A DNA stretch of 64,000 nucleotides from Diplonema japonicum (GCA_964019335.1 OZ025725.1:186001-250000), one strand, 5' to 3'. Positions 31,192 to 61,627 are shown, counted from the stretch's first letter. The notes: a model not told the origin generated them from the letters alone. Program-made: numbers and translations.

Positions 31192-31227
31192 AAAGAAAAA
31201 AAGAAGGGTGGTTTTTTTTTTTTTTTT

Positions 31228-31669
31228 ACAAAGCGAACCGCGCATTGCAGACGCAGACATACCCGTGGCGGGTGGTCATGACGGGAAGGGCACACCCGAC
31301 GCCGACGGTGGCCGAATTGCGTGGGCTGGAAGGCAAGAAGGCTGAGGTATGTGCTGAGACGTGTCCAGGACCTGTACCACGCTGATGGCAGAAGGACGGC
31401 GTTCCCAGCAGCGCGAGTGGATCGCGTCAACTCCCTGCGCTGTATAGGAGGACCGACCACACACGGGTATGACAGGAGGCCAGTACTCCCGGAGCGAACC
31501 ATGAGCAGCATCGAAGGCTTGCGTGACACGTACCTGTCACAGACCCCGACAAGGCTGCCCCGCACGTTTTACCACCGCAGTAGGAACCCGCCAGAGCCCC
31601 CAGAACGGGGACAACGGGGACTAAGTACAGCGCGGCCGGTGAGCGCAAAAACGCATACCTTAAAAGAAT

Positions 31670-31672
<3 letters not shown>
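31228..31672 (+). mobile_element. 5'-truncated, internally deleted retroelement-like remnant between T-runs
   Basis: Encodes ANRALQTQTYPWRVVMTGRAHPTP and, in another frame, KARRL...AFPA..VDRVNSLRCIG...GYDRRP, homologous to the ORF in 60491-61310; T-runs at 31212-31227 and 31673-31721. Confidence 0.75.
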
Positions 31673-31721
<49 letters not shown>

Positions 31722-32423
31722 CACGTGTCCCCTTTTGTGACAAAAATAACAGAAAGGTTTTTTAAAAAAAAAAAAAATCCGTGTTTTATTTTGTGTGTTT
31801 TTTTTTTTTTTTTTTTTGTGTGTGTTTTTTTTTTCTTCCTCAACTTTCCCGCGTTGTTCTGTTCTGCCCTTTTTTTTTCTCTTTTTTTTTTTTCCAACTA
31901 CCAAGGCGTGCTTATAATCTGTGACAAAAAAAAGGGGGGAGGGGAAAATCGGATAAGAGAAGGAGCAGGGTGTAAGTAGGGTGATGCATCCATCAGGGTC
32001 GCTGCAATACACCAAGGCCACAAAAGGTAGTACCGAGGTCGTATAGTTTAAACTTAATCTTTTTTTTTTTCTTATTTAGACACAAAATCGGAAGACGGGG
32101 AAAAAATCGAAACGCTTTTCTTCTTTTTTTCTTCTTCTTTTTTTTTCCCCCTCCCTCCAGTGAAAAAAAAAAGTAGAGTAGTAGGGGGACCCAATTTTTG
32201 TTTTCTTCCGATTCCCCCCCTTTTTTTAATTATTATTATGTTTTTTTTTTCACACACACCCACAAACACGAGGGGAGGGGGGGGGGTATTTCTTTTTTTT
32301 TATCTTCAAAATCCTTTTGTCTACGTCTTTGATTTTTTTTTTAAATTGCCAGCGAAACATCAAAGAAGCAAAAAATAAATAAAATAAATAAAGGCACCCC
32401 CCCCCCCCCCCCCCCCCCCGTGT

Positions 32424-33659
32424 ATGAACAACCCGCAGCAATATGAAATCGCATACGGAACTACGAGGATCGTGATCTCCGGCGGGGGTCAAAAACAACA
32501 ACAAGAAGAAAATGTTCCCGTCGCCGAGAAAGCGCAACGATTCGTGAATAACCTTGAAACGTACATCTTAAACAGAGATGAAAACACAATGTGCTACCAG
32601 TTCGCAACTCTCTGCAAGAGTGGCGCGGTCAACACAGAAATCCTACAAAAAACCATGAACCTCGTGTTCCAGCAGCAGTGGTTGGACGGCCCTACCGATC
32701 AAAACGAACGAGAAGGTAACTGCTCGTTAATCGACAAAATATGCATTATAAGCATCTCGTCAGGCGCGGTAACCACCGAAACAGCCTATACAGTATGGGA
32801 CAGGCTTTGCTATTCCGCGTCGCCCGACAGAACTTCACCCTGCCACATTTGTTCAGAAATGCTTTTCGTGATCTGTATTGACCCACACCACCCACCTGGA
32901 TTCGAACCGGGTCTCTTTTTAAATTGCATTCAACGCCACAATCTTGTGAAACATCAGGTGGCTTTCCTCCAATGCCGGATTAAAACCCCCGGATACGGGA
33001 AAACATTGCTTCACATTATAATAAAGAACGCAATGGAAAAAGAACTAGCAGACGCGCTGCGTCTTGAAGGGGAAAGTGGATGGACTGCCGCGTTACGCCA
33101 TGCAGTTCCACTGTCAAAGGTCAAATGGGTGGCGATCCGTGCCGGGTGGGAGCTCGGCCCTGATAAGGCCGTTGAACTACTGAACGACTTCGGGGTACAG
33201 TTCGACGGTGCCGAAGGCGTGTTGTCAGTACTGCACACCATGAAGAGCGCTTTGCAGCAGAGGGAGAGGTCTGTGGAAACCGTCAAAGAGCTTTATGACG
33301 ATGTTTACAGAACTGTTGATACAATTTCGCATGTAGCCCGCGCTCTCTCGGTTCAGGAACAAACAGGGCTTCCAAATAAACGCATTCTCAGCGATTGCCA
33401 AGCGGCGGTCAGAACGTCTGACCCTTTCATACTGAACCCGTTGCCTGCAGGACCGCCGACGCATTGGTCCGCTGTAGTGAAAGAGGGGGCTACTTGCTCT
33501 GCTTGTTCGTCTCCTTTAACAGCTTCTCCTTCACATGTTTCCCGATGCGGGCACTTCCTTCACGATACTTGTCGAAACGCTTCCGATTTCTGCCCTTCCT
33601 GTCCCGCGCCTGTCGGGCCTTCTGTTCGCTCATCTCTTTCGTTTCAGACTGTTTACTAG
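32424..33659 (+). CDS. helical protein with a C-terminal RING-H2 finger
   Basis: CSAC...CGHFLHDTC...CPSC at the C-terminus of a 411-aa ORF. Confidence 0.75.
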   Translation: MNNPQQYEIAYGTTRIVISGGGQKQQQEENVPVAEKAQRFVNNLETYILNRDENTMCYQFATLCKSGAVNTEILQKTMNLVFQQQWLDGPTDQNEREGNCSLIDKICIISISSGAVTTETAYTVWDRLCYSASPDRTSPCHICSEMLFVICIDPHHPPGFEPGLFLNCIQRHNLVKHQVAFLQCRIKTPGYGKTLLHIIIKNAMEKELADALRLEGESGWTAALRHAVPLSKVKWVAIRAGWELGPDKAVELLNDFGVQFDGAEGVLSVLHTMKSALQQRERSVETVKELYDDVYRTVDTISHVARALSVQEQTGLPNKRILSDCQAAVRTSDPFILNPLPAGPPTHWSAVVKEGATCSACSSPLTASPSHVSRCGHFLHDTCRNASDFCPSCPAPVGPSVRSSLSFQTVY

Positions 33660-33781
33660 TTTTTTTTTTGTTTTTTTTTTCGTATCAGTATATTTATTTT
33701 CCCTCACAGGCGGAAACAAAATAGGGGCGTGTGCGGGCTTTAGACAATTAAAGTATTAAGGCCGCCAGCACCCCCCCGTGG

Positions 33782-36261
33782 ATGCAGCCTTCGGACGATG
33801 CGTATTCGGGCATTGAGTCCGCAGGCCTGCATCATGGACATCAGCCTTTGATCACGCCGACTTTGCTGTCTGGAATCCCAATGCAGCAAGGAGGGCGCCA
33901 ACAAGGTGGGAAACCCGAAAACCTGCTGCAGCTACCACAGCAGCAGGCACAGGTAAACAACCAGTTGCTGATGTCCAATCACCAATCCCTTATGCTCAAC
34001 CCCCTGACGCAGTCCCAGTTGCAACAAAATTTGCAAGTATTGTTGCAGCCTGGGATAGGGGATCAGACCTCCCTCGTGCAACACGCGTTGCCAGCAGATA
34101 AGCAGCTGTTGCTGCAACAACAACAACAGCAACAGCAGCACGCGCAGCAACAGCAGCAGCAGCAGCAGCAGCAGCAACATGCACAGCTGCAGCAGGCTCA
34201 GCTGCAACAAGCTCAATTGCAGCAAGCTCAGCTGCAACAGGCTCAGTTGCAGCAACTCCAGCTTCAGCAGTTGAGCATACAGCAGCAATTGCCTGTGTCT
34301 TTGTCACCTATGTTAACTCTGCAGACGCTGCCTATCACCCAAGCTGCGGCTCAGTCACAGCTGTCACAGTCGCAGCTGTCACAGTCGCAGCTGTCACAGT
34401 CACAGCTGTCACAGCCGCAGCTGTCTCAGCCGCAGCTGTCACAGTCGCAGACCCTTTCTACTTCACAGCCGAATGCGGGTCTTAACACCTCGCTCGCGGC
34501 TAGCCTGGGCACAAATGTGAACAATTCCTTGGGGAACCTTGCCAACACAAACCTCTCCAAGCCCGCGGCGACCCTCCCTCCGTCTCCCCTCTACCAGCAC
34601 CCTTCCCCCACGGCCGCCACCGCCGAGCCACTTAGCAGGGCAGACAGTTCACACAGCCTCAACCCCGCACCGAAGACGAAGAAGAAGCAGCCACAGCGCA
34701 CCGTTGAATCCTTCACAATGTCGATGGCTTCTGAGGCGAGGCAGAAGAACAGGAAAGCAGCGGAAGCTGTGCTGTCGGACGCGAAGATCGCACGCTGCGT
34801 CAACGCTGACCTGTACAAGGTGTGCATTTAGAACAACAACAAAAAAGAAAAAGAGCAAAAAATAAAAATAAAATAAAACAACCGCACAGCCCTTGATCCG
34901 CTTGTACGGGGAACTAGACGACCCGGAGGCTGCGGAGCAGGTGATCCAAGACATGAAAGAGAACACTGTGGCGCCTGACGCGAGCACATACGGCACGCTG
35001 CTGGCCGCGCACAGCAGGAAAAGAGGCGGCAGGTACGACACGCCAGCAGCAGAGAGAGTATTGCAGAGGGCGAAGGACGAGAAGAAGGTCAACGTGCAGA
35101 TGTTCAGCTGCTTAATGAGCCTGTACGGGGAAATGGGCCATCCGGAGAAGGCAGAGGAGCAGCTGGAAGAGATGCAAAAGCTATCAGTAAAGCCGGACGC
35201 AAACACATACAGCACTCTGATCGCCGCCTACGCCAAGAAGAAAGAAGTGGACAAGGCCAAGGGGGTGCTCGACAGGGCAAAGAAGGCAAAGTGTGTGAAC
35301 GCAGATCTTTACAAACCCCTGATGCGCTTGTACGGCACAACGGTGGACTCAAACCCTGAGGAGCTTATCGAAGACATGGAGAACAATGGTGTGCACCCTC
35401 ATGCAAGCACCTTCGCCACACTGCTGGCGGTGCACGCAAGGTCGAAGGACCGCAAGAAAGCGGAGGAGGTCTTGCATCGTGCGAAGAAGGAAGGCAAGGT
35501 AAACGCTCACATTTACTCCCCTCTCATGCGACTCTACGGCGAACTCAAGGACAGCGAAGCGGCGGAAGCACTGCTTCAGGAAATGCTCGACAATGAAATG
35601 AAGCCGGATATCAGCATTTATGCAACCCTCCTTGCAGTCCACGCGGGGAACAAGAACAGAGACGGTGCTACTAAGGTACTAGAACGCGCTAAGCTCTCCG
35701 GCTTTGCGGGGAAGCAGATCTACAAGGGGCTCATGAACCTCTGCAGCGATTCCAACGATCCTGCTGCAGCGGAGTTCTTCTTGAACGACATGCTGAAGGA
35801 CACCAAGGTGTGGGCGGGAGAAAAAAAAGAAGAAAAAAAAAAAAAATCTCAGACCCCACCAACCCCGTACATTTTCGAGACCATCATCGCTTCGTACTGC
35901 AAGCAGGGTGATATCAAGGCGGCCATGCGTATTCTTGACCAGGCGAAGATGCACAATGATAAGAGAGAAGCCGGGACGCCTCCTCTGCTTCGGGCGGAGG
36001 CGTTCAAGCATATCATGGATATGTTCAAGGAGGAAGACAACAAGAGCGGGGCAAGGCAGCTTGTGGACATCTTGGCCTCGTGCCAGATAAACTCGCAGCT
36101 TGCCGACGAGGCACTGGAGGTATATCTCATCTTCTTATAATTTCAAACAAAACCCGTAGATCATCGACTTGCATGACAGAGGAGAAACTGAAGAGGCGAG
36201 GAGGCTGATCGAGGAGAAGGATGGTGAGACGCGTGCTGCAAGCGCTGCAAAACAGGTATGG

Positions 36262-36296
<35 letters not shown>

Positions 36297-36556
36297 TGCT
36301 CACTTCCCTGTCGGAGCTCCTTGAGAAGAACGAAAGGTTGTACCTGATCACCAATTTTGCGAACGGGGATAAGTGCAGGAAATGCGGTCTGTCCATCACC
36401 GGGCACCCGTTCTGTAGCACAGACGGCGTGCGCCATAAACCCCCTGCGTCCATTCCAGATATTCTGTCTTGTTTAGATCCCTTTCAGATGTCCTCTGATC
36501 GGAGGCCACAAACACCTCCTGCTGATGTGGATGATGTGTTTGGTGGTATGAGTTAA
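33782..36556 (+). CDS. polyQ low-complexity + pentatricopeptide repeat (PPR) protein with a C-terminal Cys/His motif; introns 34820-34889, 35808-35852, 36120-36159, 36256-36295
   Basis: Splicing joins ORFs 33782, 34893 and 36221. The first junction restores CVNADLYKPL, which recurs internally. 35-aa repeats such as VKPDANTYSTLIAAYAK; CRKCG...PFC...H near the end. Confidence 0.8.
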
Positions 36557-37749
36557 TTTTTTTTTTTGGGAGGAGGGGAAAAAAAATTAAAAAAAGGTGA
36601 CCAAGGAGGCCGATCGCTGACGTGCCCAAACCCTAAGAAGGTTTTTTTTTTTTTCTTTTTCTTTTTCTTTTTTCCAAAAAAAAGGGGGGGAGGGGGGAGA
36701 AAAAAAATAACACTTTATAGCTATTTACTGCCAACAAGTAATGACTTTACCGCAGTTGTTTTCCCTCCTTTTCTTGACTAAGAGTTGCCGCTGTCACCAT
36801 CTCTAATCAGGCAAATTAGGAGGAAAAAGTAGTCCAACCTGGAACTGAGAGGAATAACTGAATCGACATTATTTCACCGTGAAGTAATGTTACCCCTGTT
36901 GCGCTTTGGGTACTAAGGCCCCGGATCTCTACTTACAAAGTGCCCTAAGTCTTGACTAGGTAACCCATCGGGTGAAAGGACCCCAGTACAGCATCGAACT
37001 AAAATTTCCTTACCTTGGGGTAAGCAGTCTGGTTCTTTTCAACTTGCTAGAAAACCTGATTCCCTGTGTCGTCCCTGTGTCTGCTGTTCGTGCTAATAAA
37101 TATCCGTGTGGATATTAATTTATTTAGTTAACTATTTTTTGCCATTTTTTTTTTTTTTTAATGCTCTTTTGCCAGGGACAGCACATGCATATACAGGGGT
37201 GGGCCCCAAACGGTGCTTCATAAAACTCACACAATCACAGTATGATTTTGCAGGCCTCGACGAGTTAAGTTAAAAAAAAAAAGAAAAGAGAATAAAAGGA
37301 TGGGTGGGGGGGGGGGGGGGGGGAGGGGTGCAACAAAGAGCAGCACAAGCACTTATTATCAGCTCCCCCCCCCCCTTTTTTCATTCTTTCCTGCTTTTTT
37401 TTTGATTGTTTTGTTTTTTTTTTTTTTTTTTTTTCTGGGACCAACGTTTCTTTTTTTTTTTTGTATTGTGTTTATTTTTTTTTTTTTCCGTGTTTCCCCT
37501 ATAGTTGTGGGACAGTGGGTAGAGGGGAATAAAGAACAAAAGGAGGAAGGGGGGCTTTTAAAAGAAAGGGGGGAAAATGAAAAAGGTTAAAAAAAAAAAA
37601 AATAATCCCTTTTTTTCTCTCTCTCTGTTGATTTCTTTTCTTTTCTTTTCTATTTTTCTGCTTTCAATGAAGTCGTGTAAGGAGGCAGGAATGGTAAGGG
37701 CTTGAATTTCCAGTCCAGGGGTGTTCCTTCTTTATTTTTTTCTCCCCCC

Positions 37750-37780
<31 letters not shown>

Positions 37781-37829
37781 AAGAACAGCGCGGCCGGTGA
37801 GCGCAAAAACGCATACCTTAAAAGAATAG
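37781..37829 (+). mobile_element. very short 3'-end copy of the 31228-31672 element, between T-runs
   Basis: acagcgcggccggtgagcgcaaaaacgcataccttaaaagaatag is identical to 31627-31671; flanked by T-runs. Confidence 0.85.
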
Positions 37830-37969
37830 TTTTTTTTTTTTAAAGGATCTTAAATTCGCAGCAAGAAAAAAAAAAGGAAAAAAAAAAAAAAGAAAGAAAC
37901 ATAAAAAAAAAAAAGAAAAAAAAAATACCCTTCACCCCTCCCACACACTTGATATCAACAAACTCATTC

Positions 37970-38000
<31 letters not shown>

Positions 38001-38365
38001 TTTGAATCTGTCACATTGTCGATTTTTTTCTTAAGGTTCTTGATCCAGCGCCCTATAAAACTTCTTTGCCCCTGACCTTGATTTATGGGCTGGGTAAGCA
38101 ACGACTTTTCTTTGCCTTGAATTTCTTTGAGACAAGAGTTGAATCAGAAATAAAAGATGACATTTCGGCCAATAATGTGTTGTTGCCCCAATCCCTTCTT
38201 CCCTCACTATTGAATACCAGATTCCCCTCCCAATTTTTTTTGTTTATTTTTTTTTTTTTTGAAACGAAGATCCAGTCATCCGGTATTTTACCCCCTCACA
38301 ACAAGGAGAACAAAAAAAAAAAAAAAAAAAAAAAGGGAAAAAAAAAGTAAATCTAAAGAAAATTC

Positions 38366-38396
<31 letters not shown>

Positions 38397-38484
38397 TTCC
38401 GAGAAAAATGGGGGAGAGAAAGAAGGAAAACAAAAAGATGATTCTGTTTTTTTTTCTTTTTTTTTTCTTTTTTTTTTTTTTTTT

Positions 38485-38805
38485 CCAGGTGGTGGGGATA
38501 ACATGAAAATATAAGAAAAACATCAGATGTGTTGTTCGCTGTTGACCTCCTCGTCGGTCATCACCGGTAGCGCCCGAGTGGAGAACATAATGCAGATGCT
38601 CAGGGTGACGAACAGGCAGCAAACTGCACGAGCGCAGAATCTTGGTTACCCGGGACGCACCGGCTGGGGTTGAGCTGTACACCGCACGCATTAAGGACAC
38701 GACGCGGAACGCAGAAGAAGCTACAACTCGGCCGCGGCGCGCCCCCTGTAATCAAGACAGTTCTTGTGCAGGGCGCCGCCAACACCGGCCTCCTTGAACT
38801 CATAA
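38485..38805 (+). mobile_element. T-run-flanked dispersed repeat remnant
   Basis: 3' part matches 1-71; terminal gggcg...tccttgaactcata resembles the end of 60491-61310 (gggcg...tcctttaactcata); T-runs on both sides. Confidence 0.6.
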
Positions 38806-39666: not shown

Positions 39667-40082
39667 GATGTGGTAGCCGTTTCTCAGGCTCCCTCTCCGG
39701 AATCGAACCCTAATTCCCCGTTACCCGTTACAGCCACGGTAGTCCACTACACTACCGTCAAAAGCTGATAGGGCAGAAGCTCTTGCGGGCTTGCACCTCC
39801 TCGAGGGAGTGTGCTATCACTCGGTTGACCTGTTTCATCCACACACCGCTGCTATTGCTAGCGTTGGTTTTTATTTCGGTCAACTGTATCCACCTCACCC
39901 CCGTAAGATCTCTCTCACAGGGTGGAATGTGAGTTGGATTTTCCGGACATGTATTAGCAATGGAGTTACCATTGTTATCCAACTGAGTGCCGAAAGGCGC
40001 TTTCCCCGCGTAGATTGTTGCCGATTTAATGAGCCGTCTGCAGATCCACTTACAGGTACAAATCCTGAGATAAGACAGCATG
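39667..40082 (-). pseudogene. isolated 18S (SSU) rRNA gene fragment, 5' domain
   Basis: Reverse complement contains ggctcattaaatc, ggataac...gctaatacatg, ttctgccctatcagc and gggtaacggggaattagggttcgattccggagagggagcctgagaaacggctaccacatc (universal eukaryotic SSU blocks); truncated at both ends. Confidence 0.92.
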
Positions 40083-41072: not shown

Positions 41073-41140
41073 GCCGGTTGCTCGTGGTTGTTTCCTCTCC
41101 TCTTTTCATTTTAATTATTCTGGCTTTTTTTTTTTCTTTT

Positions 41141-41530
41141 GCACTCGACTATGAGGAGACAACCGGTAAGTCACTGGGAGTCTACAACATGCAGAGGAAG
41201 GCACGCAGAATCAAGCTGTTGGTGGAGAGAGTCAACGCAGTGTGCAGAACGAGTCGGATAAGATGCCCCTTCCCTGCGGACGGGGCAAAGAGGGTCACGT
41301 CGCTCACAGCGATCGGAGACAAGGCTGAAATAGGCTTTAACAGGAGACCGATCTTCGCATCAAGACAGACAGCGCAAAAGCTACAGGAGTTGAAAGGGAC
41401 ATACAAGAAAGAACGCGTGTCGAAACTACGAAAAATTTTAAAGACGACAATAGGAACGAAGGCATTAATAGATAGGAACTCACACCACAAGAGGCTGTCC
41501 TCCAGTGGGATAGTCTTTTACTATGAGTTC
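41141..41530 (+). mobile_element. 5'-truncated retroelement-like remnant between T-runs
   Basis: ALDYEETTGKSLG...QRKARRI...FPA...RVTSLTAIG...IGFNRRPIFAS is homologous to the 60491-61310 ORF; T-runs on both sides. Confidence 0.8.
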
Positions 41531-41685
41531 TTTTTTTTTTTTTTTTTTTTTTTTTGTTGTTTGTATGAACTACTTGCGGTTTTTCCTTTTTTTTTTTTTT
41601 TTATAGCCATAGCGCCATGGAGTGAGTTGATTCCAAAAAAGAAAAAAAAAAAAAAAAAGAAAAACCTGCATACAGTCAACCAACT

Positions 41686-42618: not shown

Positions 42619-42847
42619 CAACACGGACGAAGCAGATCCGCCACGCTAAGGACTGGATTGACACCGCTGCATTCTGTGCTCGAAGGGACGGAGTGCAGGT
42701 AGAGAACACGCTTGTCTCAGGACCAATTGCAGTACGCGGGGACATTGCGTATTAAGGAAGCGAGACAGCATCACTCGACTCCTCAAGGCGCTCGGGAATA
42801 AAAGCAATGGGCGGCCCTCTAGCGGGGGGCTTGTCCTGTACTTTGAG
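42619..42847 (+). mobile_element. T-run-flanked remnant with a Cys/His-rich frame
   Basis: 3' end cctctagcggggggcttgtcctgtactttgagtt resembles the 41530 end cctccagtgggatagtcttttactatgagtt; one frame reads CILC...HAC...C...GHC; inverted copy of the end at 54393-54417. Confidence 0.55.

Positions 42848-52245: not shown

Positions 52246-52247
<2 letters not shown>
52131..52247 (+). repeat. short interspersed repeat, family B, between T-runs
   Basis: Matches 40984-41072 and 62003-62058; T-runs at 52122-52130 and from 52248. Confidence 0.75.
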
Positions 52248-52281
<34 letters not shown>

Positions 52282-53081: not shown

Positions 53082-54365
53082 TTAACCCATAAAGGACCGC
53101 TATTTTTCGTCTAAAAAGTCGATTTTGAACTTTTCGTTCAAATACCAAAATAAAATGGCGAGGGTGGAGTTAGAGGGTGTGTACCTATATTATTTTCACT
53201 ACCCCATTTCTGGAGCGCGAAGCGGCCTGCATTTCAGCCCCAGACGCGCCCAAACTTTGGTGGTAGAGCAGCATTTGAGAGAAACAACTCTTGCAAAGGG
53301 CACATGCTATCCGGAGGTTCCATGGTTTCTGCAAGCAGCGCTTATTCAGCGTGCAGGGTGGGCTGGTTATTTTTTTTTCACCACTTATGGCTGTTCTTTG
53401 AACACAAGGTCCGAGGTGCCGCAGATATGCGACTTGTCCAATTTAAACGTATTTCTATTTTCAAGTGGTTTTCAAGAGGTTTTCAGGTGGTTTTAAGGTG
53501 TCGTTAATGTGAAAAAATTCGAAACAGGGCACAGGGCACAGGGCACATTGCTACGTTGCGATCTCTGCACGAGAAGGCAGCAAGCCATTCGAGTGGTATA
53601 GAGGCCTTTGGATCTTACAGGGCTCATAATCAAGACAGATATAGGACGGACTCACAGATACCCCATATTCACAATATTTCAGAACGGTAATGGAAAGAAA
53701 CAGGCTCCTAAGAATAATGCGCCAAATGCGGTTTGGGTTGCCCCCTGGTGGAGGAGAAGGAGACAGAATGGCTAACGGGCGCAATCTTATAATCTTGTGG
53801 TTCCTTCTTGGTCATCCCTGTATGTACCCAAGCGAAACCTTGCTGTGGATGAACCATCATACGCTGTAGAAGCCGTGTCGGGTTCATTGTTTGTGAGCCG
53901 AAGAAGAGGAAGCGTTATGGGTTCAAAATGCAAATCAGACACCGGTTACACTCTAAACATGATTGTTTGTACCGGCGCGGGCACCCAGGGGAAAGAGGCA
54001 GAGCTGCTCATCGAATATCAGCACCAGAATTACTGGATTGTCTTTGACAACTGCTTTCGCTTGTCCCATTGATACGGATTTACAATGCGGATTTCCACTG
54101 CATGGGGACCATCAGGAAAACCCGGAAATTGCTCCCAGAATACCCATTCAGTGTCAGCAAGTGTGTGGCAAAGAAATCTTGTCAAACAACATCATCGCAA
54201 AAGGGTGGCACCCACATCAAGTGTTCCCCGCCGGAGCCTAAGCTACCTACCCCTCAGGGTGCACCTTCACGTGCCAAGGGTGCACCTTTAATGTGTCCTG
54301 AAAAGATGCAAAAGGCACGGAATTGCACTGTGTGCAACAAATTAGAGAAAAAACGCACCCGATAG
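53082..54365 (+). mobile_element. decayed piggyBac DNA transposon
   Basis: Possible TTAA-CCC left end at 53082. Frameshifted remnants FRTVMERNRLLRIMRQMRF, NLAVDEP, SDTGYTLNMIVCTG, IVFDNCF, CMGTIRKTRK and C-terminal CTVC follow piggyBac transposase motif order. Confidence 0.8.
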
Positions 54366-54392
54366 CCTTTTAGAGCCGCAGGAGTGAAAAAC

Positions 54393-54564
54393 AACTCAAA
54401 GTACAGGACAAACCCCCTTCTTCTCTGCGCTGCATTGGAGGACTGACCACATACCGGTATAAAGGCACCCGTCACAGACCCTGACTGCAGGCTGCCCCGC
54501 AGTCTGACCACTGCAGTAGGAACCCGCCAGAGCCCCAGAACAGGGACAAAAGCGCATATTTTAA
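54393..54564. mobile_element. composite of two remnants: inverted end of the 42619-42847 type plus an internally deleted copy of the 31228-31672 type
   Basis: 54393-54417 reverse-complements to ggggtttgtcctgtactttgagtt; 54425-54564 matches 31435-31662 (gcagtaggaacccgccagagcccc). Confidence 0.75.
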
Positions 54565-55304
54565 CCCAAAATAATAATAAAAGAAGTAATGAGCTCAGGA
54601 AGCTCTGTTGCCAACCGAAGCGTGCGAAAGAGAGGGGGGGGGAAAAAAAGAAACCTCCATCGAATCCAAAACAAAAGCATGAAGGAAGAGGGGGGGGGGG
54701 GGGAAGAAGCAAAGTTGGTCATGATGTGTGTTTTCAATTCTTTCCCTTCCCTCCTCCCCTCCTCTCTTCACCGTCATTCGAGAAAGAAAAATCCTTAAAA
54801 AGAAAAGGGAATACACAAAAGAAATTCTGGGGGACCTAGATTTGCCCCTTGGCTTGCCCACGGGGTGGAAGGAACCCCTTTTGTAAAGGCTTACTTTATT
54901 TTGAAAAAGTGGTGGTTTTCTTTTTGTGTTCCAACTACTTTGGCGCTGGGGTGCATTTTTTCAGTCTTCAGTTCTGGACAAAAAAAAAAAAAAAAAAAAA
55001 TACCGTATATTCGACCATGTGTGCTTGTGTCTAGGGGGTTGAACAATTAAAAAAAAAAAAATGTTAACTTAGGTTTTAACTAAACGATTGTGTTTTTTTT
55101 TTTCTTCTTCCCCCCCACCCTCCTCCTCCTCCTCCCCTTTCTTCGTCCTTTCTTTTCTTCTTCTCAATGCAACTAATTCTTCTTCTTCTTCTTTTTTTTT
55201 TTCTGTTCCTGATTTTCTTCTTTTTTTTTTTTTTCCCTTCTCAATTAAAAAAGAAAATACAAAAAAAAAAAAAAAAAAAGGGGGTCGGGGGAGGAGAGAA
55301 AAGA

Positions 55305-55916
55305 ATGTCGTCCATATCACGTTCCAGTGAATACCTCATAAAATGCAGCGAGGTTTTGGAATACGGTGTTGAAGCACGATGGACAGCAGTAGTGTTGTTT
55401 CAAAGATACAAAGAAAGCGTTGGGTCGGAGGAGGGAACCGCCGACCGGAGCGAGGTAGGAGCGGCCTGCTTGTGGTTAAGCGGTAAAGTCTGCGACCAGT
55501 TCAGAAAAGGTAGAGACATTGTGAACGCGTGCAGCTACATAAAAAACAACGGCAAGCAGTTGCGGATAGGTGAGGAGATGTTCTCGTTGAAGGATAACCT
55601 GTGTAGCGCAGAACAGAGCGTCCTTCGGCAACTCTCTTACGACTGCTATGTCGATACCCCTTACAAGCACCTTCTCAACTATTTTTACGTGGTGTTTTCA
55701 AATAATCCTCCGCGGTCCGTGGTGCAGCTCAGCATCTCGCTCTTGAACGAGACCTTGTTGACAAGTTTGCCGATGTCCACCCGCCCCCATATCCTTGCTG
55801 CTGTTTGTATCCACGCGGCATTCCATCTTCTCTCCCTCCCCGATCCCCCATTGCTTCCCGACGACGCCGCAGCGTTGCTCCCCGACATCCTTGCTTTTTA
55901 TGATACTCCGAAATAG
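55305..55916 (+). CDS. cyclin, transcription-type (cyclin Q/M- or L-like)
   Basis: TAVVLFQRY, AACLWLSGKV...RDIVN, AEQSVLRQL...PYKHLLNY. Confidence 0.85.
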   Translation: MSSISRSSEYLIKCSEVLEYGVEARWTAVVLFQRYKESVGSEEGTADRSEVGAACLWLSGKVCDQFRKGRDIVNACSYIKNNGKQLRIGEEMFSLKDNLCSAEQSVLRQLSYDCYVDTPYKHLLNYFYVVFSNNPPRSVVQLSISLLNETLLTSLPMSTRPHILAAVCIHAAFHLLSLPDPPLLPDDAAALLPDILAFYDTPK

Positions 55917-56023
55917 TAAAAGATTTTTTTTTTTTCTTTCTTTTCTTTTCTCATAATTCAATTTACAAAAAAAAAAAAAAAAAAAAAAAAAAGAAAGAAG
56001 GGAGGTGGGGGTAAAAAAAAAAA

Positions 56024-59000
56024 ATGGTTGTTCCAAGGCAACCTACCCTGAGGGAGGTGCAGCATGCCGTCCGTGCGGACCCTGCGAACGCACTTTCCAT
56101 CATAAAGGAGTCCAGCGGGAGGGAGTGCGCATATGCGTGGCATACAAAGCAGTATCAGACGCAATATGTTCCAGTTGAGGTTGAGAGGGTGAAGACGGTG
56201 AAGGAATTCGTGGACAGACAGGTAACCCACCCTGTCCCCGACCCTGAGGTTGAGAGGCAGCTGCTCCAGGCACAGGAGGAGTTGGAAAAAATGCGCAATG
56301 AAATGCTTCCCCGTGCGGCTCTGGAAGACGATTTGGTTGCCAAGGACAAATTATCCCTGAAATCCATCAACCAAAAACTGAAGATGAAGCTCTCCAAGAA
56401 GAACACGCAAATCACCGATCTCCAAACCGCGCTCTTCAAGAACTTCACGATGGCCAAGGAGCTCAGCAACCTTTCGTGCCCCGAGGTGGCGGAGATCAGG
56501 AAGGAGGAGATGTTATTACTGAAGTCCAAGGTGGTTATGCTGCAAGAAGTTCTGCGTCACAAAGAAGAGTACATCCAAGAGGTCACGCAGGCTCTCATTG
56601 ACAGCAGCAAAGGCGTCCTGCGCATCCAGAAAGAAACCCAAGAGGTTCTCCGGACCGAACGTGTTGAAAGTGCTGCAGCGTGGGAAGAAACAAAGCGGCT
56701 TGAAGAACGCACACGACAGCTCGAAGACGAAATGGTCATCATCCCAAAGCTCCAGAACAAAATCCGCGAGTCGGAGGCCACCTTAGAGGACCTGCGACAA
56801 CAGCTAGAGGACAAAGACGATGTGATAGATGCTCTGGAGGAACAGTTTCGACAGACCACCATCGACGAGGCAGCCGATCTGTCACGCGATGAGGTCCTCG
56901 TGCGCATGACACAGCTTCGATTCAAAATCGGTCTCAAGAACGCGCAGGCTCTTAAAGCAAAAGCGGAGATCAACAAGCTCCGTGAAAAAGTCAAATCCCA
57001 AGAGGCCGAGCTGACACGCACGCAACACTGCTACGAAGACCAACGCGAGGACAACAGGAAGCTCCGCTCGACCATCGACGGGCTGCACGTGCAGCTCACA
57101 TCTCTCCGACGCGATTTGCTCGCGTCATGTGCACCCGTGCGTCCCATCATAATGCCGCAAGCCATCTACGACGACGAAAGGAGGCTTCTCGAGGCCCCGT
57201 CAGCACCCAGAACACGTGCCCTCACCGAGCAGGACATTGTTGCGGGATTCTGTCTCTTCGACTCTTCTGCACAGGGGGAGCTTCCTGCATGGGACATGCC
57301 GTTGTACCTACGCACGCTTGGCTTCACAACAGATGACCCTGCTGTGTGCAGGCTGGCCACGCAGTATCGCACGCAGCACGGGACGCTCACTTTGGAGGAG
57401 TTCCGCGACGTTATCCTGAACATCCAGAAAGAGTTCACGCCGATGAAGATGTCGACGGAGAACCTCCTTGGGCAGTGGCAGGAGGCTTCGAAGCGGCGTG
57501 TGGAGGCGAACAAGAAGCGTGACCGTCAGCTGAAAGGCCGTACAACCACCAACGAGGACTCCGACTCCGACGATGAGCTGCACAAGAATGTGGCTGCGAT
57601 CAGCATGCGCGTGGTGCCCATGACCACCGGCGACATTGAGGTCGCCTTCAACCTCTTCGACCACGAGGTGTCTGGCGAGCTGGACCAGAAGATCATCGGC
57701 ACCCTGTCGCACGCCCTCGGCCTCGTGCGCACCACCGCGGACCTCGACGCTCTCAACGTGCTTGTCCTGCGTGAGTTCTCAGGCACGCTGAACGGCGACG
57801 AGTGGCGGGACCTCGTCCAGTACTGCCAGGGCGTCAAACCGAACTTCGTTCCGCGTCGTGCCATGGAACACAAGCCTCCTAAGGAGAGGATCTACCCCCG
57901 CCCCTTCCCCAAGGCAGGCCGCACGCACCCCCTGTCTGAGCGTGAGATCGAGACCGCCTTCAAACTTTTCGACGTCGACAAGTCAGGCCTCCTCCCAGGG
58001 CACCAGATGCCCACGTACCTGGAGTGCCTCGGGTTGGTGTGCTCTGGAGCTGAATTCACAACGCTGCTCGTAACACAGTACAAAGCAGACCTCACGCAGA
58101 AGGTGTCGTTCGGGTACTTCTGCAGGATGGTGAGGTTCGTCCAAGCACACCTGGAATTCTTCAATCCCTCACCCAAAAAACCCCAGGTGCGGGCCGTGGG
58201 TAGCGATGCACAAGAGGCACGCAGGGCACCTCCCATTCTGGCACCGTCACCAGTGAAGCTATCGACAGGGATGAGCGGGGTGAAGTCACCATCGTCCGTG
58301 CGAGCACCACCTTCAAGACCGAACACTGCGGTCTATAGTCCAAGGACAAGGAAGGCAGGCGAGTACCCGCCATGGATGATGCCATCAGCGGTACCGGCAC
58401 AAGTGGAATCCATCGAAAAGGGCAGTGCAGCTCCATCCTTAAGAGCACGCATCGCCACACCTCCCGAAGCAGTCATGCCACCGAACCTGACCCCACACAT
58501 GGACGAGATGAACGACTTCACATCTCCAAACGTAACGAAGGAGCTGCTCCCGGAGGACCTGACAAATATGAACATCTTAACAGCGTACAACGCGTACACA
58601 CAGCTGTTCGACTGCCCACAAGTCTCAATGATGACAGGGTCGAAGGCACTGGCACTGCAGCATGTGGCATTGGCGGTACGGTCATTGGGTTTCAATGGGG
58701 TCACGAAGAGGTTTTTGGAACAAATCTGGCCGTTCGAACGGAAAAAAGAAGCCGTGCGGCAGCAAGGCGGCGGCGCAGGCGACGAACTAATCCTGAACGA
58801 GAACGAATTCATCAAATTGGTGAGGAACATCGAAAGGTACGGCACTAAGAGGGACCCGAAAAATGCGGGGCTCCCGAAAAGGGTGAACAGGAACCTAGCA
58901 GGCGGGGCCCTGAGGGAGTCTGACATCACTTGGGTCTTTGCGTTGCTTGATGACGATGAGAAATCCTTCCTCACCAGCAAGGACTTTCGAACTATGCTTA

Positions 59001-59203
59001 CCCTTCTGGGCTTCACCCTCCAGGATGAACCGGAGATACAGAACGTTCTTGCAAGATATGACAATAGCAGGCCGAGCAGGTCCTCTCGCGAGCACAATAT
59101 TTTTGAGCTGCATGACTGCCAAGAGGTTATCCGGCAGCTCACCAACAGGAGCCTCTCGACAAGCAAGGAGGTCTTCAGCCCTTCCTCGTCCTGGCTTTGC
59201 TGA
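56024..59203 (+). CDS. coiled-coil protein with repeated EF-hand-pair modules
   Basis: N-terminal coiled coil; AFKLFDVDKSG, AFNLFDHEVSG, GFCLFDSSAQG, VFALLDDDEKS, each followed by L..LG. Confidence 0.85.
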   Translation: MVVPRQPTLREVQHAVRADPANALSIIKESSGRECAYAWHTKQYQTQYVPVEVERVKTVKEFVDRQVTHPVPDPEVERQLLQAQEELEKMRNEMLPRAALEDDLVAKDKLSLKSINQKLKMKLSKKNTQITDLQTALFKNFTMAKELSNLSCPEVAEIRKEEMLLLKSKVVMLQEVLRHKEEYIQEVTQALIDSSKGVLRIQKETQEVLRTERVESAAAWEETKRLEERTRQLEDEMVIIPKLQNKIRESEATLEDLRQQLEDKDDVIDALEEQFRQTTIDEAADLSRDEVLVRMTQLRFKIGLKNAQALKAKAEINKLREKVKSQEAELTRTQHCYEDQREDNRKLRSTIDGLHVQLTSLRRDLLASCAPVRPIIMPQAIYDDERRLLEAPSAPRTRALTEQDIVAGFCLFDSSAQGELPAWDMPLYLRTLGFTTDDPAVCRLATQYRTQHGTLTLEEFRDVILNIQKEFTPMKMSTENLLGQWQEASKRRVEANKKRDRQLKGRTTTNEDSDSDDELHKNVAAISMRVVPMTTGDIEVAFNLFDHEVSGELDQKIIGTLSHALGLVRTTADLDALNVLVLREFSGTLNGDEWRDLVQYCQGVKPNFVPRRAMEHKPPKERIYPRPFPKAGRTHPLSEREIETAFKLFDVDKSGLLPGHQMPTYLECLGLVCSGAEFTTLLVTQYKADLTQKVSFGYFCRMVRFVQAHLEFFNPSPKKPQVRAVGSDAQEARRAPPILAPSPVKLSTGMSGVKSPSSVRAPPSRPNTAVYSPRTRKAGEYPPWMMPSAVPAQVESIEKGSAAPSLRARIATPPEAVMPPNLTPHMDEMNDFTSPNVTKELLPEDLTNMNILTAYNAYTQLFDCPQVSMMTGSKALALQHVALAVRSLGFNGVTKRFLEQIWPFERKKEAVRQQGGGAGDELILNENEFIKLVRNIERYGTKRDPKNAGLPKRVNRNLAGGALRESDITWVFALLDDDEKSFLTSKDFRTMLTLLGFTLQDEPEIQNVLARYDNSRPSRSSREHNIFELHDCQEVIRQLTNRSLSTSKEVFSPSSSWLC

Positions 59204-59641
59204 TTTCATTTTTTTTTTTATATTATATTGTACTGTACCATTTATTATTATTATTTTTTTATATTTGTTTGTTTTTTTTTTTTTTTTTTTTTATTGTACT
59301 CTTTCTTCCCCTTATTATTTGTAATTATTTGTTTGTTGTATGCAATGTGGAACGGGGGCAAACTCCTGGGATAACATGCGAGAAAAAGAGCGCGGTGTCT
59401 CTTCAAGGCATTCTGCTTCGACACCGTTTGGGCACAGTGACCATGCCTGCCTACCTCATACCCCTTTCGTCAGCTCCATGACTGTCCAGAAGAAAACTGG
59501 ACAAGTGGCTGTTGTTGGACCAATGCCTTGGTCGAGTGGACATTACTTCTGCTGTTACTCACAAAAACAAAAGACAAGGCGTGCTACAAGGGGAGTGGAG
59601 GAAGGAAAAAAAAAAAAAAGGGAGAAAAAAAAAAAAGAAAA

Positions 59642-60461
59642 ATGTTCGGGAAGAAGAAGGAAGAGAAAGTGAAGCACGTGGACACTTGGGTGCCCGGGAC
59701 AAAGGTGGATTACATAAAAAAAGATGACGGAAAGGTATAAGAAAAAAAAAAACCCCAAACCCTCTTTTTTTTTTTTTTTCTCTCCCAGACCTACGTAACT
59801 AACAGTGGACAGGACTACCCGATTATGCAAGAGGAGGACTTCTTGGTAAACCCCCCCCCCTTTTTTTTTAAATATTACTAATTCAAATCAGAAATTTCGT
59901 GATTTTGCTGACGACTCGAGCGACGCGTGGACCCTAAGGCTGCACAAGGGCAGCGTTTATGTCTGGGACCGGCCTAGCGTGGACAAGGAGAAGAGCAGCA
60001 TAAATATGGTTAAGCTATTCTCTGAGTTCCCAGGAGTGACCCCTGAGACCATGTATGACTGCCTGCACGACGCCGACTACCGTGTGGTGTGGGACACCTC
60101 AATGGGTGACGGGTACAACATCTGCCATCTTGATGACAACAATGATGTTGGCTACTACCTCCTCAAGCTGCCTGCGGTGGTGGCCAACAGGGACTTCTGC
60201 AATGAACGGTCCTGGAGAAACGTGGACGGCCGCGAATTCATCATCATGAACCACTCTGTGGTTCACGAAAAATGCCCCCCAACGTATATATAATTTGGAA
60301 AAAAAAAAAAAAAAAAAAAAAAAAACAGGAAAGCGGTCCGCGGGCAATCAATCATCAGTGGTTACCTCATCCGGCCACACGGCACTGGGTGCAGTATTAC
60401 GTACGTCAGCCAGTCGGATCCTAAGGGCTGGATTCCTGTCAAGATTATGAACTCTGTATGC

Positions 60462-60492
<31 letters not shown>

Positions 60493-61627
60493 AACAGCGG
60501 GAAGAACACGAAGGCATGACGCGCAGGGGGCTGGAACCGTGTACGAAGCTGCATGGCATCCTGCCAAGGGGAGCAGGGAAGGATGTCAGGGAAAGGCTCG
60601 AAGGAACGCAGAGGTACCTGCTGGCGGTGGTGGGGGAGCGGGACGCAGCCCTACAAGCGAAGAGGCAGGAGGTGTACCACACACACCAGTGGCTGGAGAT
60701 CACACAAGGTCAAGAACACCCAGTACCGTCGGACAAGGACTTCGGCAAGCTACCGGCAGGGGATGTCCTACGGGAGTACACGAAGGAGGTGCTGAGGTGG
60801 ATGCGGCAACTGCGCTGGTATGCAGGCAGCAGGAACACGTCAGTGTCGACGGTGGAGCTGGCACTGGATTTCGAGAACGTGACCGGGAAGACCCTTGGAG
60901 GGAAGCTGGGGGATCTCGCAGAAGTACAGCAGAAAGCGAGGAGATTGCATGGACTGATGAAGAAGATCTGGCACACATGGGAGCTAGGGAGGGTACTGAA
61001 GAAGGTGAAAGGAAGGAGGGCCTTCCCAGCTGAGCCGAGCACAAGGGTGCACACACTACGATCCATCGGGAGGACAAAGGCGGTGATCGGATGGAACAGG
61101 AGGGCGATATTTGCATCACCGAAGACCAAGCATGACCTAGAGGCGTTGAAAGGACAATGGGCGAGAGAACGAAGAGAAAGAGCGGCCAGGCTGGGGAGAA
61201 GGCCGGCAAGACCACCAAAGGAGGAGAAACCGCTGCTGAAAGGGGATAGGTGCAGGTAGAAGATGAGAACAAGGGGGCGTCTCACAAAGACTTCCTTTAA
61301 CTCATATATATTTTTTTTTTTTTTTTTTTTTGATACTTTAAACCAGATCATTACCTCGCAAGGGCCAAACCTAATTGAAAAATTGAAGGATGTGTCCAAG
61401 GTATACCCGGATTGGTATGTAAAACAATACTATAAAAGTTGCGTATTTTTTTTTCCAGGAAGAAAAAAAACTCTGCTGACCGCTTCCCTTGGCGCACTGG
61501 CCCGCAGCCATGGTCCACCACCCAGCCAAACCGTACTATACAGTGGTTCTGCGAGCAGACTAAAATCGACATTGTCGATGTTTTAGGCAAAAAAGAGGAA
61601 ACAGTTGTTGAAGAGAAACAAGAATGA
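59642..61627 (+). CDS. START-domain lipid transfer protein (STARD10/PCTP-like); introns 59735-59788, 59846-59891, 60284-60328, 60456-61346, 61415-61458
   Basis: Spliced ORF: YDCLHDADYRVVWD, NRDFCNERSW, IIMNHSVVH..CP, VRGQSIISGYLI, YVSQSDPKGWIP. Confidence 0.88.
60491..61310 (+). mobile_element. 5'-truncated retroelement-like insertion in the T-run of START-gene intron 4
   Basis: Open ~255-aa frame with no start codon (LRWMRQLRW, VSTVELALDFENVTG, KARRL, AFPA, RVHTLRSIG, GWNRR); T-runs at 60462-60490 and 61311-61331. Confidence 0.85.

What the first reader, a model, noticed from the sequence alone, without database searches (positions are those of the whole stretch)
31212..61331. Retroelement-like family that sits in poly(T) tracts with its coding strand running into poly(T)
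Seen: three remnants (31228-31672, 41141-41530, 60491-61310) encode diverged versions of one domain. All three share KARR[L/I]..FPA..RV.[S/T]L..IG..G[W/F/Y][N/D]RR; ALD[F/Y]E..TG occurs in the last two and W..G..HP.P in the first and third. Conservation in that frame fixes + as the coding strand. Each remnant lacks a start, is cut at a different 5' point, and has a T-run on both sides. The 49-bp piece at 37781-37829 carries only the exact 3' end of the 31 kb copy, also between T-runs; 38485-38805, 42619-42847 and 1-71 end at T-runs too. Known: variable 5' truncation with a fixed 3' end is the signature of target-primed reverse transcription, but L1-type elements end in poly(A) on the sense strand. 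Inference: a non-LTR lineage that targets A/T homopolymers in the reverse polarity, nicking the A strand and priming on a U-rich RNA 3' end. A-runs are just as common on this strand, yet none of these copies uses one. No reverse transcriptase is visible in the window, so the class assignment is inferred.
Basis: partly seen in the sequence, partly recalled or inferred. Interest (0 to 1): 0.85.

Follow-up and report, generated by a model that had tools for sequence, protein, structure and literature searches.

The report
LINE family that targets T-runs
The three remnants are cut-down copies of a large, recently active group of LINE jumping genes in a diplonemid protist; unlike human L1 they have no poly(A) tail, insert into runs of T, and almost always point the same way as the host genes, a habit I found no report of.

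Summary
The remnants at 31231-31677, 41139-41536 and 60490-61309 are 5'-truncated copies of three families (E, D, A) of one LINE superfamily. Full-length family A is 6176 bp and has ORF1 (585 aa) plus ORF2 with a 2A-like peptide, AP-endonuclease, reverse transcriptase, a CCHC knuckle and the shared about 230-aa C-terminal domain. That domain has no Pfam match, and every named relative is a diplonemid.

Each of the five families ends in its own fixed terminus, followed directly by a T-run. A T-run also precedes the variable 5' junction. The two runs are equally long (means 8.9 and 9.0 T), and interrupted runs match on both sides as target-site duplications of 5-14 bp. The T's therefore come from the target, not from a U-tail.

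The geometry puts the first nick just 3' of oligo(dA) on the opposite strand, the mirror image of L1's TTTT/AA. Copies share the strand of the nearest kinase gene in 92 of 94 cases, although A- and T-runs are equally common.

A 324-bp SINE-like partner shares the family A terminus. The window's family A copy sits in a tiny intron that is still spliced out.

The parts
60490..61309 (+). Family A LINE remnant: the last 820 bp of the 6176-bp element. It holds the ORF2 C-terminal domain (frame 60492-61259, stop included) and a 51-nt 3' UTR ending CTTTAACTCATATAT.
   Evidence: 99.6% identical to positions 5357-6176 of the full-length copy L031:1667-7842; tblastn finds at least 154 places in the genome.
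60462..60490 (+). T29 directly 5' of the truncated family A copy (target T-run, upstream half).
61311..61331 (+). T21 directly 3' of the family A terminus, after one A of the (AT)n tail (target T-run, downstream half; includes the duplication).
60456..61346 (+). Intron 4 (GTATGC...AAACCAG, 891 nt) of a START-domain gene (exons about 59642-61627). The family A copy lies in its T-run. Without the element the intron would be about 50 nt.
   Evidence: Exons 3 and 4 match Pfam START positions 40-138 and 143-184. Exon frames are open and the splice sites follow GTATG/CAG. RNA contig X6 record 27 has exactly 206 letters between 60284 and 61471, equal to exon 4 + exon 5 + 12 nt.
31231..31677 (+). Family E LINE remnant (C-terminal domain plus 3' UTR ending AAGAATAG) with an internal 180-bp deletion. 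It is flanked by T16 (31212-31227, then ACA) and T49 (31673-31721).
37780..37835 (+). Extreme 5'-truncated family E copy: only the last 56 bp, lying between T-runs.
   Evidence: 100% identity to E reference positions 1801-1856; sequence.
41139..41536 (+). Family D LINE remnant (C-terminal domain; terminus ..CTATGAG) between T11 (41125) and T25 (41531).
38488..38804 (+). Full-length copy of a 324-bp non-coding SINE-like element. Its head is AGGTGGTGGGGATAACATG. Its tail is a mutated form of CCTCCTTTAACTCATATAT, the family A/B terminus. T-runs lie on both sides.
1..71 (+). 3' end of a relative of the SINE-like element, cut by the window edge and followed by T7.
   Evidence: Sequence similarity to 38730-38804 seen by eye; not aligned formally.
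42619..42847 (+). Unclassified remnant ending CTGTACTTTGAG plus a T-run (a family D-like terminus), preceded by a T-rich tract.
   Evidence: no blastn match to the five family references.
54467..54549 (+). Short family E-like fragment (87% to E reference positions 1712-1793), not in the original finding.

Best explanation

Shown:
- Full-length family A is 6176 bp. It has ORF1 (585 aa) and an overlapping ORF2 with a 2A-like GIHPNPGP peptide, an AP-endonuclease, a reverse transcriptase, a CCHC knuckle and a lineage-specific C-terminal domain of about 230 aa.
- Copies are 99-100% identical and are transcribed.
- They are 5'-truncated at any point, and each ends in a fixed, family-specific terminus.
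- A T-run of similar length lies on each side, and T-rich target-site duplications of 5-14 bp are visible.
- Copies point the same way as the host genes in 92 of 94 cases.
- A 324-bp non-coding element shares the family A/B terminus and the same flanks.

Inferred:
- The endonuclease makes the first nick on the opposite strand just 3' of the oligo(dA): 5'-AAAA/B-3', the mirror image of L1's 5'-TTTT/AA-3'.
- The A-ended 3'-OH primes reverse transcription at the specific 3' terminus of the element RNA, which the protein recognises (a 'stringent' LINE). For families A and B, slippage there gives the variable (AT)n.
- The second nick falls at or inside the T-run a few bases downstream, so T's are duplicated on both sides.
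- The C-terminal domain, with a weak winged-helix likeness, is my candidate for reading the homopolymer or the RNA terminus.
- T-runs lie in tiny homopolymer-filled introns and between genes, so insertions are tolerated. The window's family A copy is spliced out with its intron.

The cause of the orientation bias is not settled. I lean slightly (about 0.5) to a bias at integration, coupled to the direction of transcription or replication, over removal of antisense copies by selection (about 0.4).
For: Domains:
- RVT_1 at 1.7e-25 and Exo_endo_phos at 4.2e-12 in three families.
- ORF1 is the conserved frame: 50% identity between families A and B, and 30% to the separate ORF1 of family C.
- The 2A-like peptide and the CCHC knuckle are read directly from the translation.

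Copy number and youth: at least 154 tblastn places among 1294 candidates, many at 98-100% identity. Families D and E each gave 150 scored places.

Expression: the EukProt Diplonema japonicum transcriptome holds ORFs 100% identical over the RT region.

Fixed 3' end with variable 5' end and T-runs on both sides: with statistics.

Target-site duplications: matched flanks share 7.9 nt on average, against 6.0 +/- 0.5 for shuffled pairs (0 of 200 shuffles reach it). Informative interrupted duplications are seen in L032, L021, L056, L010, L006 and L018, and whole short runs are duplicated in L005, L011 and L045.

Orientation: 40 of 41 (families A-C) and 52 of 53 (family D and relatives) lie on the strand of the nearest kinase gene within 150 kb. 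On the + strand of the window, T-runs and A-runs of 10 or more number 102 and 85.

SINE-like partner.

Intron location and splicing.

C-terminal domain:
- No Pfam match.
- 144 HMM hits; all ten that I looked up by name or source are diplonemid proteins or unnamed ENA contigs.
- The AlphaFold model has pLDDT 87.5.
- The best structural likenesses are the R2 C-terminal knuckle region (Z 4.5) and Fur/PerR/Zur-type winged helices (Z 3.7-4.1).
Against: - No empty site was seen, so the length of the duplications inside long T-runs, and the exact nick positions, are inferred from about ten informative copies.
- The RNA 3' end was not observed. A few U's carried from the donor flank cannot be excluded: 0-3 extra T lie between terminus and duplication.
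- About a quarter of copies have fewer than 4 T at one junction. Some of these are internal deletions or rearrangements (L001, L036, L062). Two are genuine A-rich sites (L043, L046).
- The winged-helix likeness is below the noise level the tool states (Z under 8).
- The 3' UTRs do not fold better than shuffles, so a 'stringent' stem-loop is not shown.
- The orientation landmarks are sparse: one gene family, with the nearest landmark up to 150 kb away.
Confidence: 0.8

Rival explanations
1. The 3' T-run is a templated tail. The element RNA ends in poly(U), for example by read-through into the donor's downstream T-run or by uridylation. An A-ended nick anneals to it, as L1's T-ended nick anneals to poly(A).
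For: - Every family's terminus is followed by T.
- Some 3' runs are long, at 30-49 T.
- 0-3 extra T can lie between the terminus and the recognisable duplication.
- Donor copies always have T downstream, so read-through RNA would carry U's.
Against: - The 3' and 5' runs have the same mean length, 9.0 and 8.9. A templated tail would make the 3' side longer.
- Interruptions in the runs (C, A, G) are duplicated on both sides.
- Short runs have equal length on both sides: T7/T7, T5/T5, T6/T6.
- Copies in AAAAAA or TAAA have no T at the junction (L043, L046).
- The (AT)n variation shows that initiation happens at the AU terminus itself.
Confidence: 0.12
2. Integration has no orientation preference. 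The near-absolute co-orientation with host genes comes from rapid loss of antisense insertions. Such insertions might disturb splicing of the tiny introns, or make double-stranded RNA with abundant sense transcripts in an RNAi-proficient cell.
For: - Sense bias is known for other euglenozoan retroposons and is read there as functional or selective: L1Tc about 10:1 (PMC5814959) and Leishmania SIDERs about 4:1 (PMC2689281).
- At least one copy lies in an intron that has to be spliced.
- D. papillatum encodes a full RNAi set (PMC10161547).
Against: - The bias is about 46:1 and holds for copies 99-100% identical, and for fragments of 50-800 bp that carry little sequence.
- A-runs, the targets that antisense copies would use, are as common as T-runs.
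- In humans, selection on intronic L1 gives only about twofold bias (my own knowledge).
Confidence: 0.4
3. There is no target specificity. Non-coding DNA here is full of homopolymers, so any insertion that survives lies near a T-run by chance.
For: T-runs of 10 or more occur about 1.6 times per kb in the window, and 7.7% of non-ORF positions are followed by at least 4 T.
Against: - 72% of 3' junctions and 69% of 5' junctions abut at least 4 T, against 7.7% expected (p about 1e-31 and 5e-23).
- The first 20 nt downstream average 13.5 T, against 6.2 in the background.
- A-, C- and G-runs are not used, although A-runs are as frequent.
Confidence: 0.02
4. The shared domain belongs to a host gene family or a DNA transposon, and the pieces are pseudogenes.
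For: None beyond the absence of an RT inside the window.
Against: The domain is the C-terminus of ORFs with AP-endonuclease and RT in every family. No terminal inverted repeats or transposase were seen.
Confidence: 0.01

Closest known systems
L1 (LINE-1) of mammals
   Same: An AP-endonuclease + RT LINE with ORF1 and ORF2 and a CCHC knuckle after the RT. It shows 5' truncation and short target-site duplications, and its homopolymer-type target is read by the endonuclease. L1 ORF2p is the best solved-structure match of the RT (E 6e-21).
   Different: - L1 nicks 5'-TTTT/AA-3' and primes on a poly(A) tail, so copies end in A-runs on the sense strand. Here the flanks are T-runs on the sense strand, there is no poly(A), the terminus is fixed, and the inferred nick is 5'-AAAA/B-3'.
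- This element has an extra C-terminal domain of about 230 aa after the knuckle, and a 2A-like peptide before the endonuclease.
- Intragenic L1 is biased to antisense. These copies are almost all sense.
L1Tc / ingi of trypanosomatids (Ingi clade)
   Same: Euglenozoan hosts with one-directional gene arrays. Both are AP-endonuclease + RT elements with a 2A-like peptide ahead of the enzymes. L1Tc has a strong sense bias relative to the gene cluster, about 10:1 (PMC5814959). Both have short non-autonomous partners (NARTc, RIME).
   Different: - L1Tc and ingi have an RNase H domain, a C2H2 C-terminus, a poly(A) tail, a fixed non-homopolymer target motif and a 5' Pr77/HDV-like ribozyme.
- None of these was found here: no RNase H in Pfam, no ribozyme family in Rfam, no A tail.
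'Stringent' LINE/SINE pairs (e.g. UnaL2/UnaSINE1, CR1- and L2-type elements); from my own knowledge
   Same: The 3' terminus is a specific sequence with a short repeat that varies in number, (AT)n here. A non-autonomous partner shares only that 3' end (16 nt here).
   Different: - Those elements are not reported to select homopolymer targets.
- Their recognition stem-loop is demonstrable, whereas here the 3' UTR folds no better than shuffles.
- The partner here has no tRNA, 7SL or 5S head. Its head resembles that of a LINE family.
Microsatellite-specific LINEs (Dong (TAA)n, Kibi (TC)n, Koshi (TTC)n, Mino (AC)n, Waldo (ACAY)n); from my own knowledge, Kojima and Fujiwara 2004
   Same: AP-endonuclease LINEs whose target is a simple repeat, with the repeat on both sides of the copy.
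   Different: The targets there are di- to tetranucleotide repeats. I know of no member, and found none in the paper library, that targets a mononucleotide T-run in the sense orientation.

Membership tests
Non-LTR retrotransposon (LINE), AP-endonuclease type | Reverse transcriptase domain of the LINE type | tested here: met
   Pfam RVT_1 at 1.7e-25, 7.3e-26 and 1.2e-23 in families A, B and C; PDB matches to L1 ORF2p and R2.
Non-LTR retrotransposon (LINE), AP-endonuclease type | N-terminal apurinic/apyrimidinic-like endonuclease | tested here: met
   Pfam Exo_endo_phos at 4.2e-12 and Exo_endo_phos_2.
Non-LTR retrotransposon (LINE), AP-endonuclease type | Copies share a fixed 3' end and are truncated at variable 5' points; no LTRs | tested here: met
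   54 family A copies; alignment start ranges from position 1 to 5709 of 6176, and all end at 6176.
Non-LTR retrotransposon (LINE), AP-endonuclease type | Target-site duplications flanking each copy | tested here: met
   Matched flanks exceed shuffled pairs in 200 of 200 shuffles; interrupted T-rich duplications of 5-14 bp. The exact length inside long runs is not measurable without empty sites.
L1 clade | Poly(A) or A-rich 3' tail on the sense strand | tested here: not met
   The terminus CTCATATAT(AT)n is followed by T; 1 of 54 copies is followed by A6.
L1 clade | Insertion at 5'-TTTT/AA-3' (A-rich duplication on the sense strand) | tested here: not met
   The duplications are T-rich on the sense strand; only L043 looks L1-like.
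L1 clade | RT groups with L1 in a phylogeny with reference clades | not tested
   No reference RT set was at hand. The nearest relatives by sequence are all diplonemid, plus one Symbiodinium protein.
Ingi clade (L1Tc/ingi) | RNase H domain downstream of the RT | tested here: not met
   No RNase H family in Pfam scans of whole ORF2 or of its last 630 aa. More distant relatives do carry PF13456/PF00075.
Ingi clade (L1Tc/ingi) | 2A-like self-cleaving peptide ahead of the enzymes | tested here: met
   ..ARLTAQGIHPNPGP|N.. lies 10 residues before the endonuclease. Its activity was not tested.
Ingi clade (L1Tc/ingi) | 5' Pr77 / HDV-like ribozyme | tested here: inconclusive
   No ribozyme family among the Rfam matches at E up to 1 over the whole element. 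A divergent ribozyme would be missed.
SINE (non-autonomous partner of a LINE) | Short, non-coding, high copy number, shares the 3' end of a LINE in the same genome | tested here: met
   324 bp; at least 1500 candidates; 40 of 40 scored copies are full length at 98-100% identity. The last 16 nt equal the family A/B terminus.
SINE (non-autonomous partner of a LINE) | Pol III-type head derived from tRNA, 7SL or 5S RNA | tested here: not met
   No such Rfam match. The head resembles the 5' end of LINE family C.

The most novel reading that the evidence does not exclude
Integration is itself coupled to the direction in which the chromosome arm is transcribed or replicated. The element nicks or uses only the oligo(dA) of the template (or nascent lagging) strand, read by the diplonemid-specific winged-helix-like C-terminal domain.

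Every new copy would then be born in the sense orientation inside a homopolymer of an intron or spacer, where it is transcribed with its host unit and spliced out harmlessly. Each insertion duplicates T's, so the superfamily and its SINE-like partner would also be a main source of the many T-runs of this genome.
Probability: 0.25. Interest if true: 0.8.

Novelty: new variant of a known kind. Interest (0 to 1): 0.62.

Why it matters
LINE target choice is mostly understood from L1, where a T-ended nick pairs with a poly(A) tail, and from a few rDNA-, telomere- and microsatellite-specific elements. A large, currently active lineage that uses the opposite homopolymer without a matching RNA tail separates target choice from primer-template annealing. 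That separation could be tested with its endonuclease and its new C-terminal domain.

Its near-total co-orientation with the host's one-directional gene arrays offers a strong case for asking whether LINE integration can sense transcription or replication direction.

It also bears on how diplonemid genomes work. These genomes are poorly described; the D. papillatum genome paper left its transposable elements unclassified (PMC10161547). The finding links their many homopolymers, their tiny homopolymer-filled introns and thousands of young retroelement copies.

Tried and rejected
- Pfam on the three window peptides gave nothing.
- An Rfam scan of a full-length copy for a 5' ribozyme found no relevant family.
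- AlphaFold on a 6-sequence alignment was too poor (pLDDT 53.7). With 27 sequences it was good (87.5), but Foldseek against the PDB found no match at E up to 0.001. VIA-align gave only weak rows with Z up to 4.5.
- RNA folds of four 3' ends were no better than shuffles, except the SINE-like one at z -2.5.
- Read laying: all runs were Logan contigs, which break at homopolymers and repeats. No contig bridged an empty site, and no RNA ends could be read. It did show that run X6 is RNA, with GT..AG joints.
- The metagenome scan with the C-terminal domain found no relative.
Wide flanks for gene-by-gene orientation, and 30 more SINE-like junctions, could therefore not be fetched. I used kinase genes as strand landmarks instead.
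- AT skew and ORF totals in 1.5-kb flanks were too noisy to use as an orientation test.
Exons were translated and searched one by one, by reference.

Full report
**Setting**

The window is G000:C78:186001-250000 of a 62.5-Mb assembly in 132 contigs. All long ORFs lie on the + strand. No tRNA gene was found. Non-coding stretches are crowded with homopolymers: on the + strand there are 102 T-runs and 85 A-runs of 10 or more bases.

Earlier notes of this scan name the organism Diplonema japonicum. I checked this in part. Proteins of the EukProt D. japonicum transcriptome (EP01064) are 100% identical to the family A reverse transcriptase over 411 residues.

**What the remnants are**

A tblastn search with the 255-aa peptide of 60492-61256 found at least 154 places in the genome among 1294 candidates. 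Many are 98-100% identical, and some lie in open frames of about 2036 aa. I fetched nine long copies.

Family A is 6176 bp long (L031:1667-7842), and its copies are 99.8-99.9% identical over the full length. Pfam finds Exo_endo_phos (aa 631-867) and RVT_1 (aa 1229-1441) in the long frame. It finds the same in family B (75% identical in the peptide) and in family C (46%). Family C also has an OTU domain and a separate ORF1.

The first 585 codons are open in two frames. The conserved one is ORF1, L031:1719-3473. It is 50% identical between families A and B, against 35% for the other frame, and 30% identical to the ORF1 of family C. The layout is therefore ORF1 plus an overlapping ORF2.

ORF2 reads ..GIHPNPGP (a 2A-like motif) ten residues before the endonuclease. 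After the RT it has a C-x2-C-x12-H-x4-C knuckle. The window remnant starts just past that knuckle.

The other two remnants belong to families D and E. Each gave 150 scored places, with open frames of 1377-1591 aa. The window holds these pieces:
- family E at 31231-31677, with a 180-bp internal deletion;
- the last 56 bp of family E at 37780-37835;
- family D at 41139-41536;
- a family E-like scrap at 54467-54549;
- family A at 60490-61309.

**The shared domain**

Six family representatives align over about 280 residues at 33-74% identity. The invariant blocks are ELALDFE, KAR, FPA and G..RR (A1).

Pfam has no family for the domain. A word-based search of 5.8 billion proteins found only three diplonemid transcriptome ORFs. 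A full HMM search of 1.84 billion representatives found 144 hits, many at the C-terminus of 1200-2000-aa proteins that carry endonuclease and RT. I looked up ten of them by name or source. Seven are from D. ambulator, D. japonicum, D. papillatum, Flectonema neradi or Lacrimia lanifica; the other three are unnamed ENA contigs.

With a 27-row alignment, AlphaFold gives pLDDT 87.5. Foldseek finds nothing in the PDB. VIA-align gives only weak rows:
- residues 1-96 resemble the C-terminal knuckle region of R2 proteins (Z 4.3-4.5);
- residues about 113-238 resemble Fur/PerR/Zur-type and other winged helices (Z 3.5-4.1).

This is a hint of nucleic-acid binding and nothing more.

**The T-runs**

I oriented 54 family A copies on their sense strand. 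Every one ends ..CTTTAACTCATATAT plus 0-13 further AT units, and then T in nearly all. At the 5' junction, whether truncated or full length at AGGGGCTGG, a T-run comes directly before the element. Often 1-4 odd bases (CA, CGC, AAA) lie between the run and the element.

The counts are as follows:
- 39 of 54 copies have at least 4 T at the 3' side, and 29 of 42 have at least 4 T at the 5' side, against 7.7% of non-ORF positions (p about 1e-31 and 5e-23);
- the first 20 nt downstream hold 13.5 T on average, against 6.2 in the background.

Families C, D and E end in other sequences (..CTCATCTCTTA..CTATGAG..AAGAATAG), and these too are followed by T. Five of eight D/E copies with a visible 5' junction have a T-run there. 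In the laid contigs, several loose ends just before place 61262 end in T-runs. They belong to copies that keep only the last about 49 bp.

**Target or tail?**

Four results point to target sequence:
- The two runs have the same mean length, 8.9 T at the 5' side and 9.0 T at the 3' side.
- Matched flanks share longer anchored strings than shuffled pairs: 7.9 against 6.0 +/- 0.5, and none of 200 shuffles reaches it.
- Where a run is interrupted, the interruption is duplicated: TTTTTCTTTTTTTT (L032), TTTTTTCTT (L021), TTTTATTT (L056), TTTCTT (L010), TTTTC (L006). Short runs are duplicated whole: T7 (L005), T5 (L011), T5-6 (L045).
- Two young copies sit in AAAAAA and TAAA with no T (L043, L046).

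The T's are therefore target sequence and target-site duplication. At most 0-3 T could come from the RNA.

In target-primed reverse transcription, the left edge of the duplication marks the first nick, which is made on the other strand. In seven of the eight informative cases that nick lies just 3' of the A-run (5'-AAAA/G, /C or /T). This is an inference from the geometry.

**Orientation**

I used 131 protein-kinase genes (PF00069) as strand landmarks. Family A-C copies lie on the strand of the nearest kinase within 150 kb in 40 of 41 cases (p 4e-11). Family D and its relatives do so in 52 of 53. As a control, neighbouring kinases agree with each other in 53 of 58 cases.

A-runs are as common as T-runs on the coding strand, so target supply does not explain the bias. 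Sense bias is known for L1Tc (about 10:1; PMC5814959) and for Leishmania SIDERs (about 4:1; PMC2689281). The bias here is stronger, and it holds for copies that are almost identical. I cannot tell a bias at integration from fast selection.

**A partner element**

The stretch 38488-38804 is a full-length copy of a 324-bp non-coding element. It has at least 1500 candidates in the genome, and 40 of 40 scored copies are full length at 98-100% identity.

Other copies end CCTCCTTTAACTCATATAT, the same 16-nt terminus as LINE families A and B. They start AGGTGGTGGGGATAACATG, which resembles the head of family C, and they lie between T-runs. Rfam finds no tRNA, 7SL or 5S likeness.

A shared terminus without a homopolymer tail fits recognition of a specific 3' end by the LINE protein.

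**Where the window's family A copy sits**

A note of the scan (s1-867471) said it lies in an intron. I checked this.
- Exons at about 59642-61627 each have an open frame. Exons 3 and 4 match Pfam START positions 40-138 and 143-184.
- The stretch 60456-61346 starts GTATGC and ends CCAG. Those are the species' usual splice sites (PMC12621601).
- Run X6 is RNA, as its GT..AG joints at 59844/59891 and 62643/62694 show. One of its contigs has exactly 206 letters between 60284 and 61471. That equals exon 4 plus exon 5 (61347-61414) plus 12 nt of exon 6.

The 891-nt intron with the element is therefore removed.

**What is known**

The D. papillatum genome paper lists LINE-like gene models but leaves transposable elements unclassified. 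Paper searches for T-tract targets or T tails of non-LTR elements returned only work on L1's T-rich nick site.

I saw no follow-up to that note.

**Verdict**

This is a real, well-supported new variant of a known kind of element.
- Shown: its parts, its youth, its expression, its T-run flanks, the duplications, the orientation bias, the partner element and the intron site.
- Inferred: the nick site, the role of the C-terminal domain and the cause of the orientation bias.

Noticed in passing
window 59642-61627: A six-exon START-domain gene with tiny introns (44-54 nt) filled with homopolymers. One of them (60284-60328) has A27 directly before the CAG acceptor where a polypyrimidine tract is expected.
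   Followed up: partly
L037:2050-2115: A spliced-leader-RNA-gene-like sequence (..ACCAACGATTCTAAAGCTACAGTTTCTGTACTTTATTG followed by GTACCC) lies about 70 bp upstream of the 5' end of a full-length family B copy. This is the only full-length copy seen without a T-run at its head.
   Followed up: no
whole genome, kinase landmarks: On contigs with several landmarks, genes on the left part are on the - strand and genes on the right part on the + strand (C1, C3, C5, C11, C12, C14, C15, C36, C40, C61). It looks as if each chromosome were two arms transcribed outward from one inner point.
   Followed up: partly
L048 (G000:C52:350560-351730), 3' junction: The family A terminus is followed by (AT)13 and then an inverted copy of the terminus (GAGTTAAAGG). 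This looks like a snap-back or twin-priming product.
   Followed up: no
L073 (G000:C7:268305-271607): A family E copy ends, eight T follow, and the 5' head of a family C element begins. New copies land in the T-run beside older ones and build head-to-tail chains.
   Followed up: no
L031:1688-3487: The ORF2 frame stays open over all 585 codons of ORF1, although ORF1 is the conserved frame. Transcriptome ORF calls of 1.9-2.0 thousand aa follow the long frame.
   Followed up: partly
window 59851-59872, 62260-62281 and 61864-62047: Contig depth and joints show another dispersed repeat here (depth up to 12,000 in run X1; joints 59872 to 62260). It is unrelated to the LINE families I used.
   Followed up: no
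L070 and L071 (family E): Two copies at different loci start within 2 bp of each other (reference positions 1220 and 1222). This may be a short subfamily with its own 5' end rather than two chance truncations.
   Followed up: no
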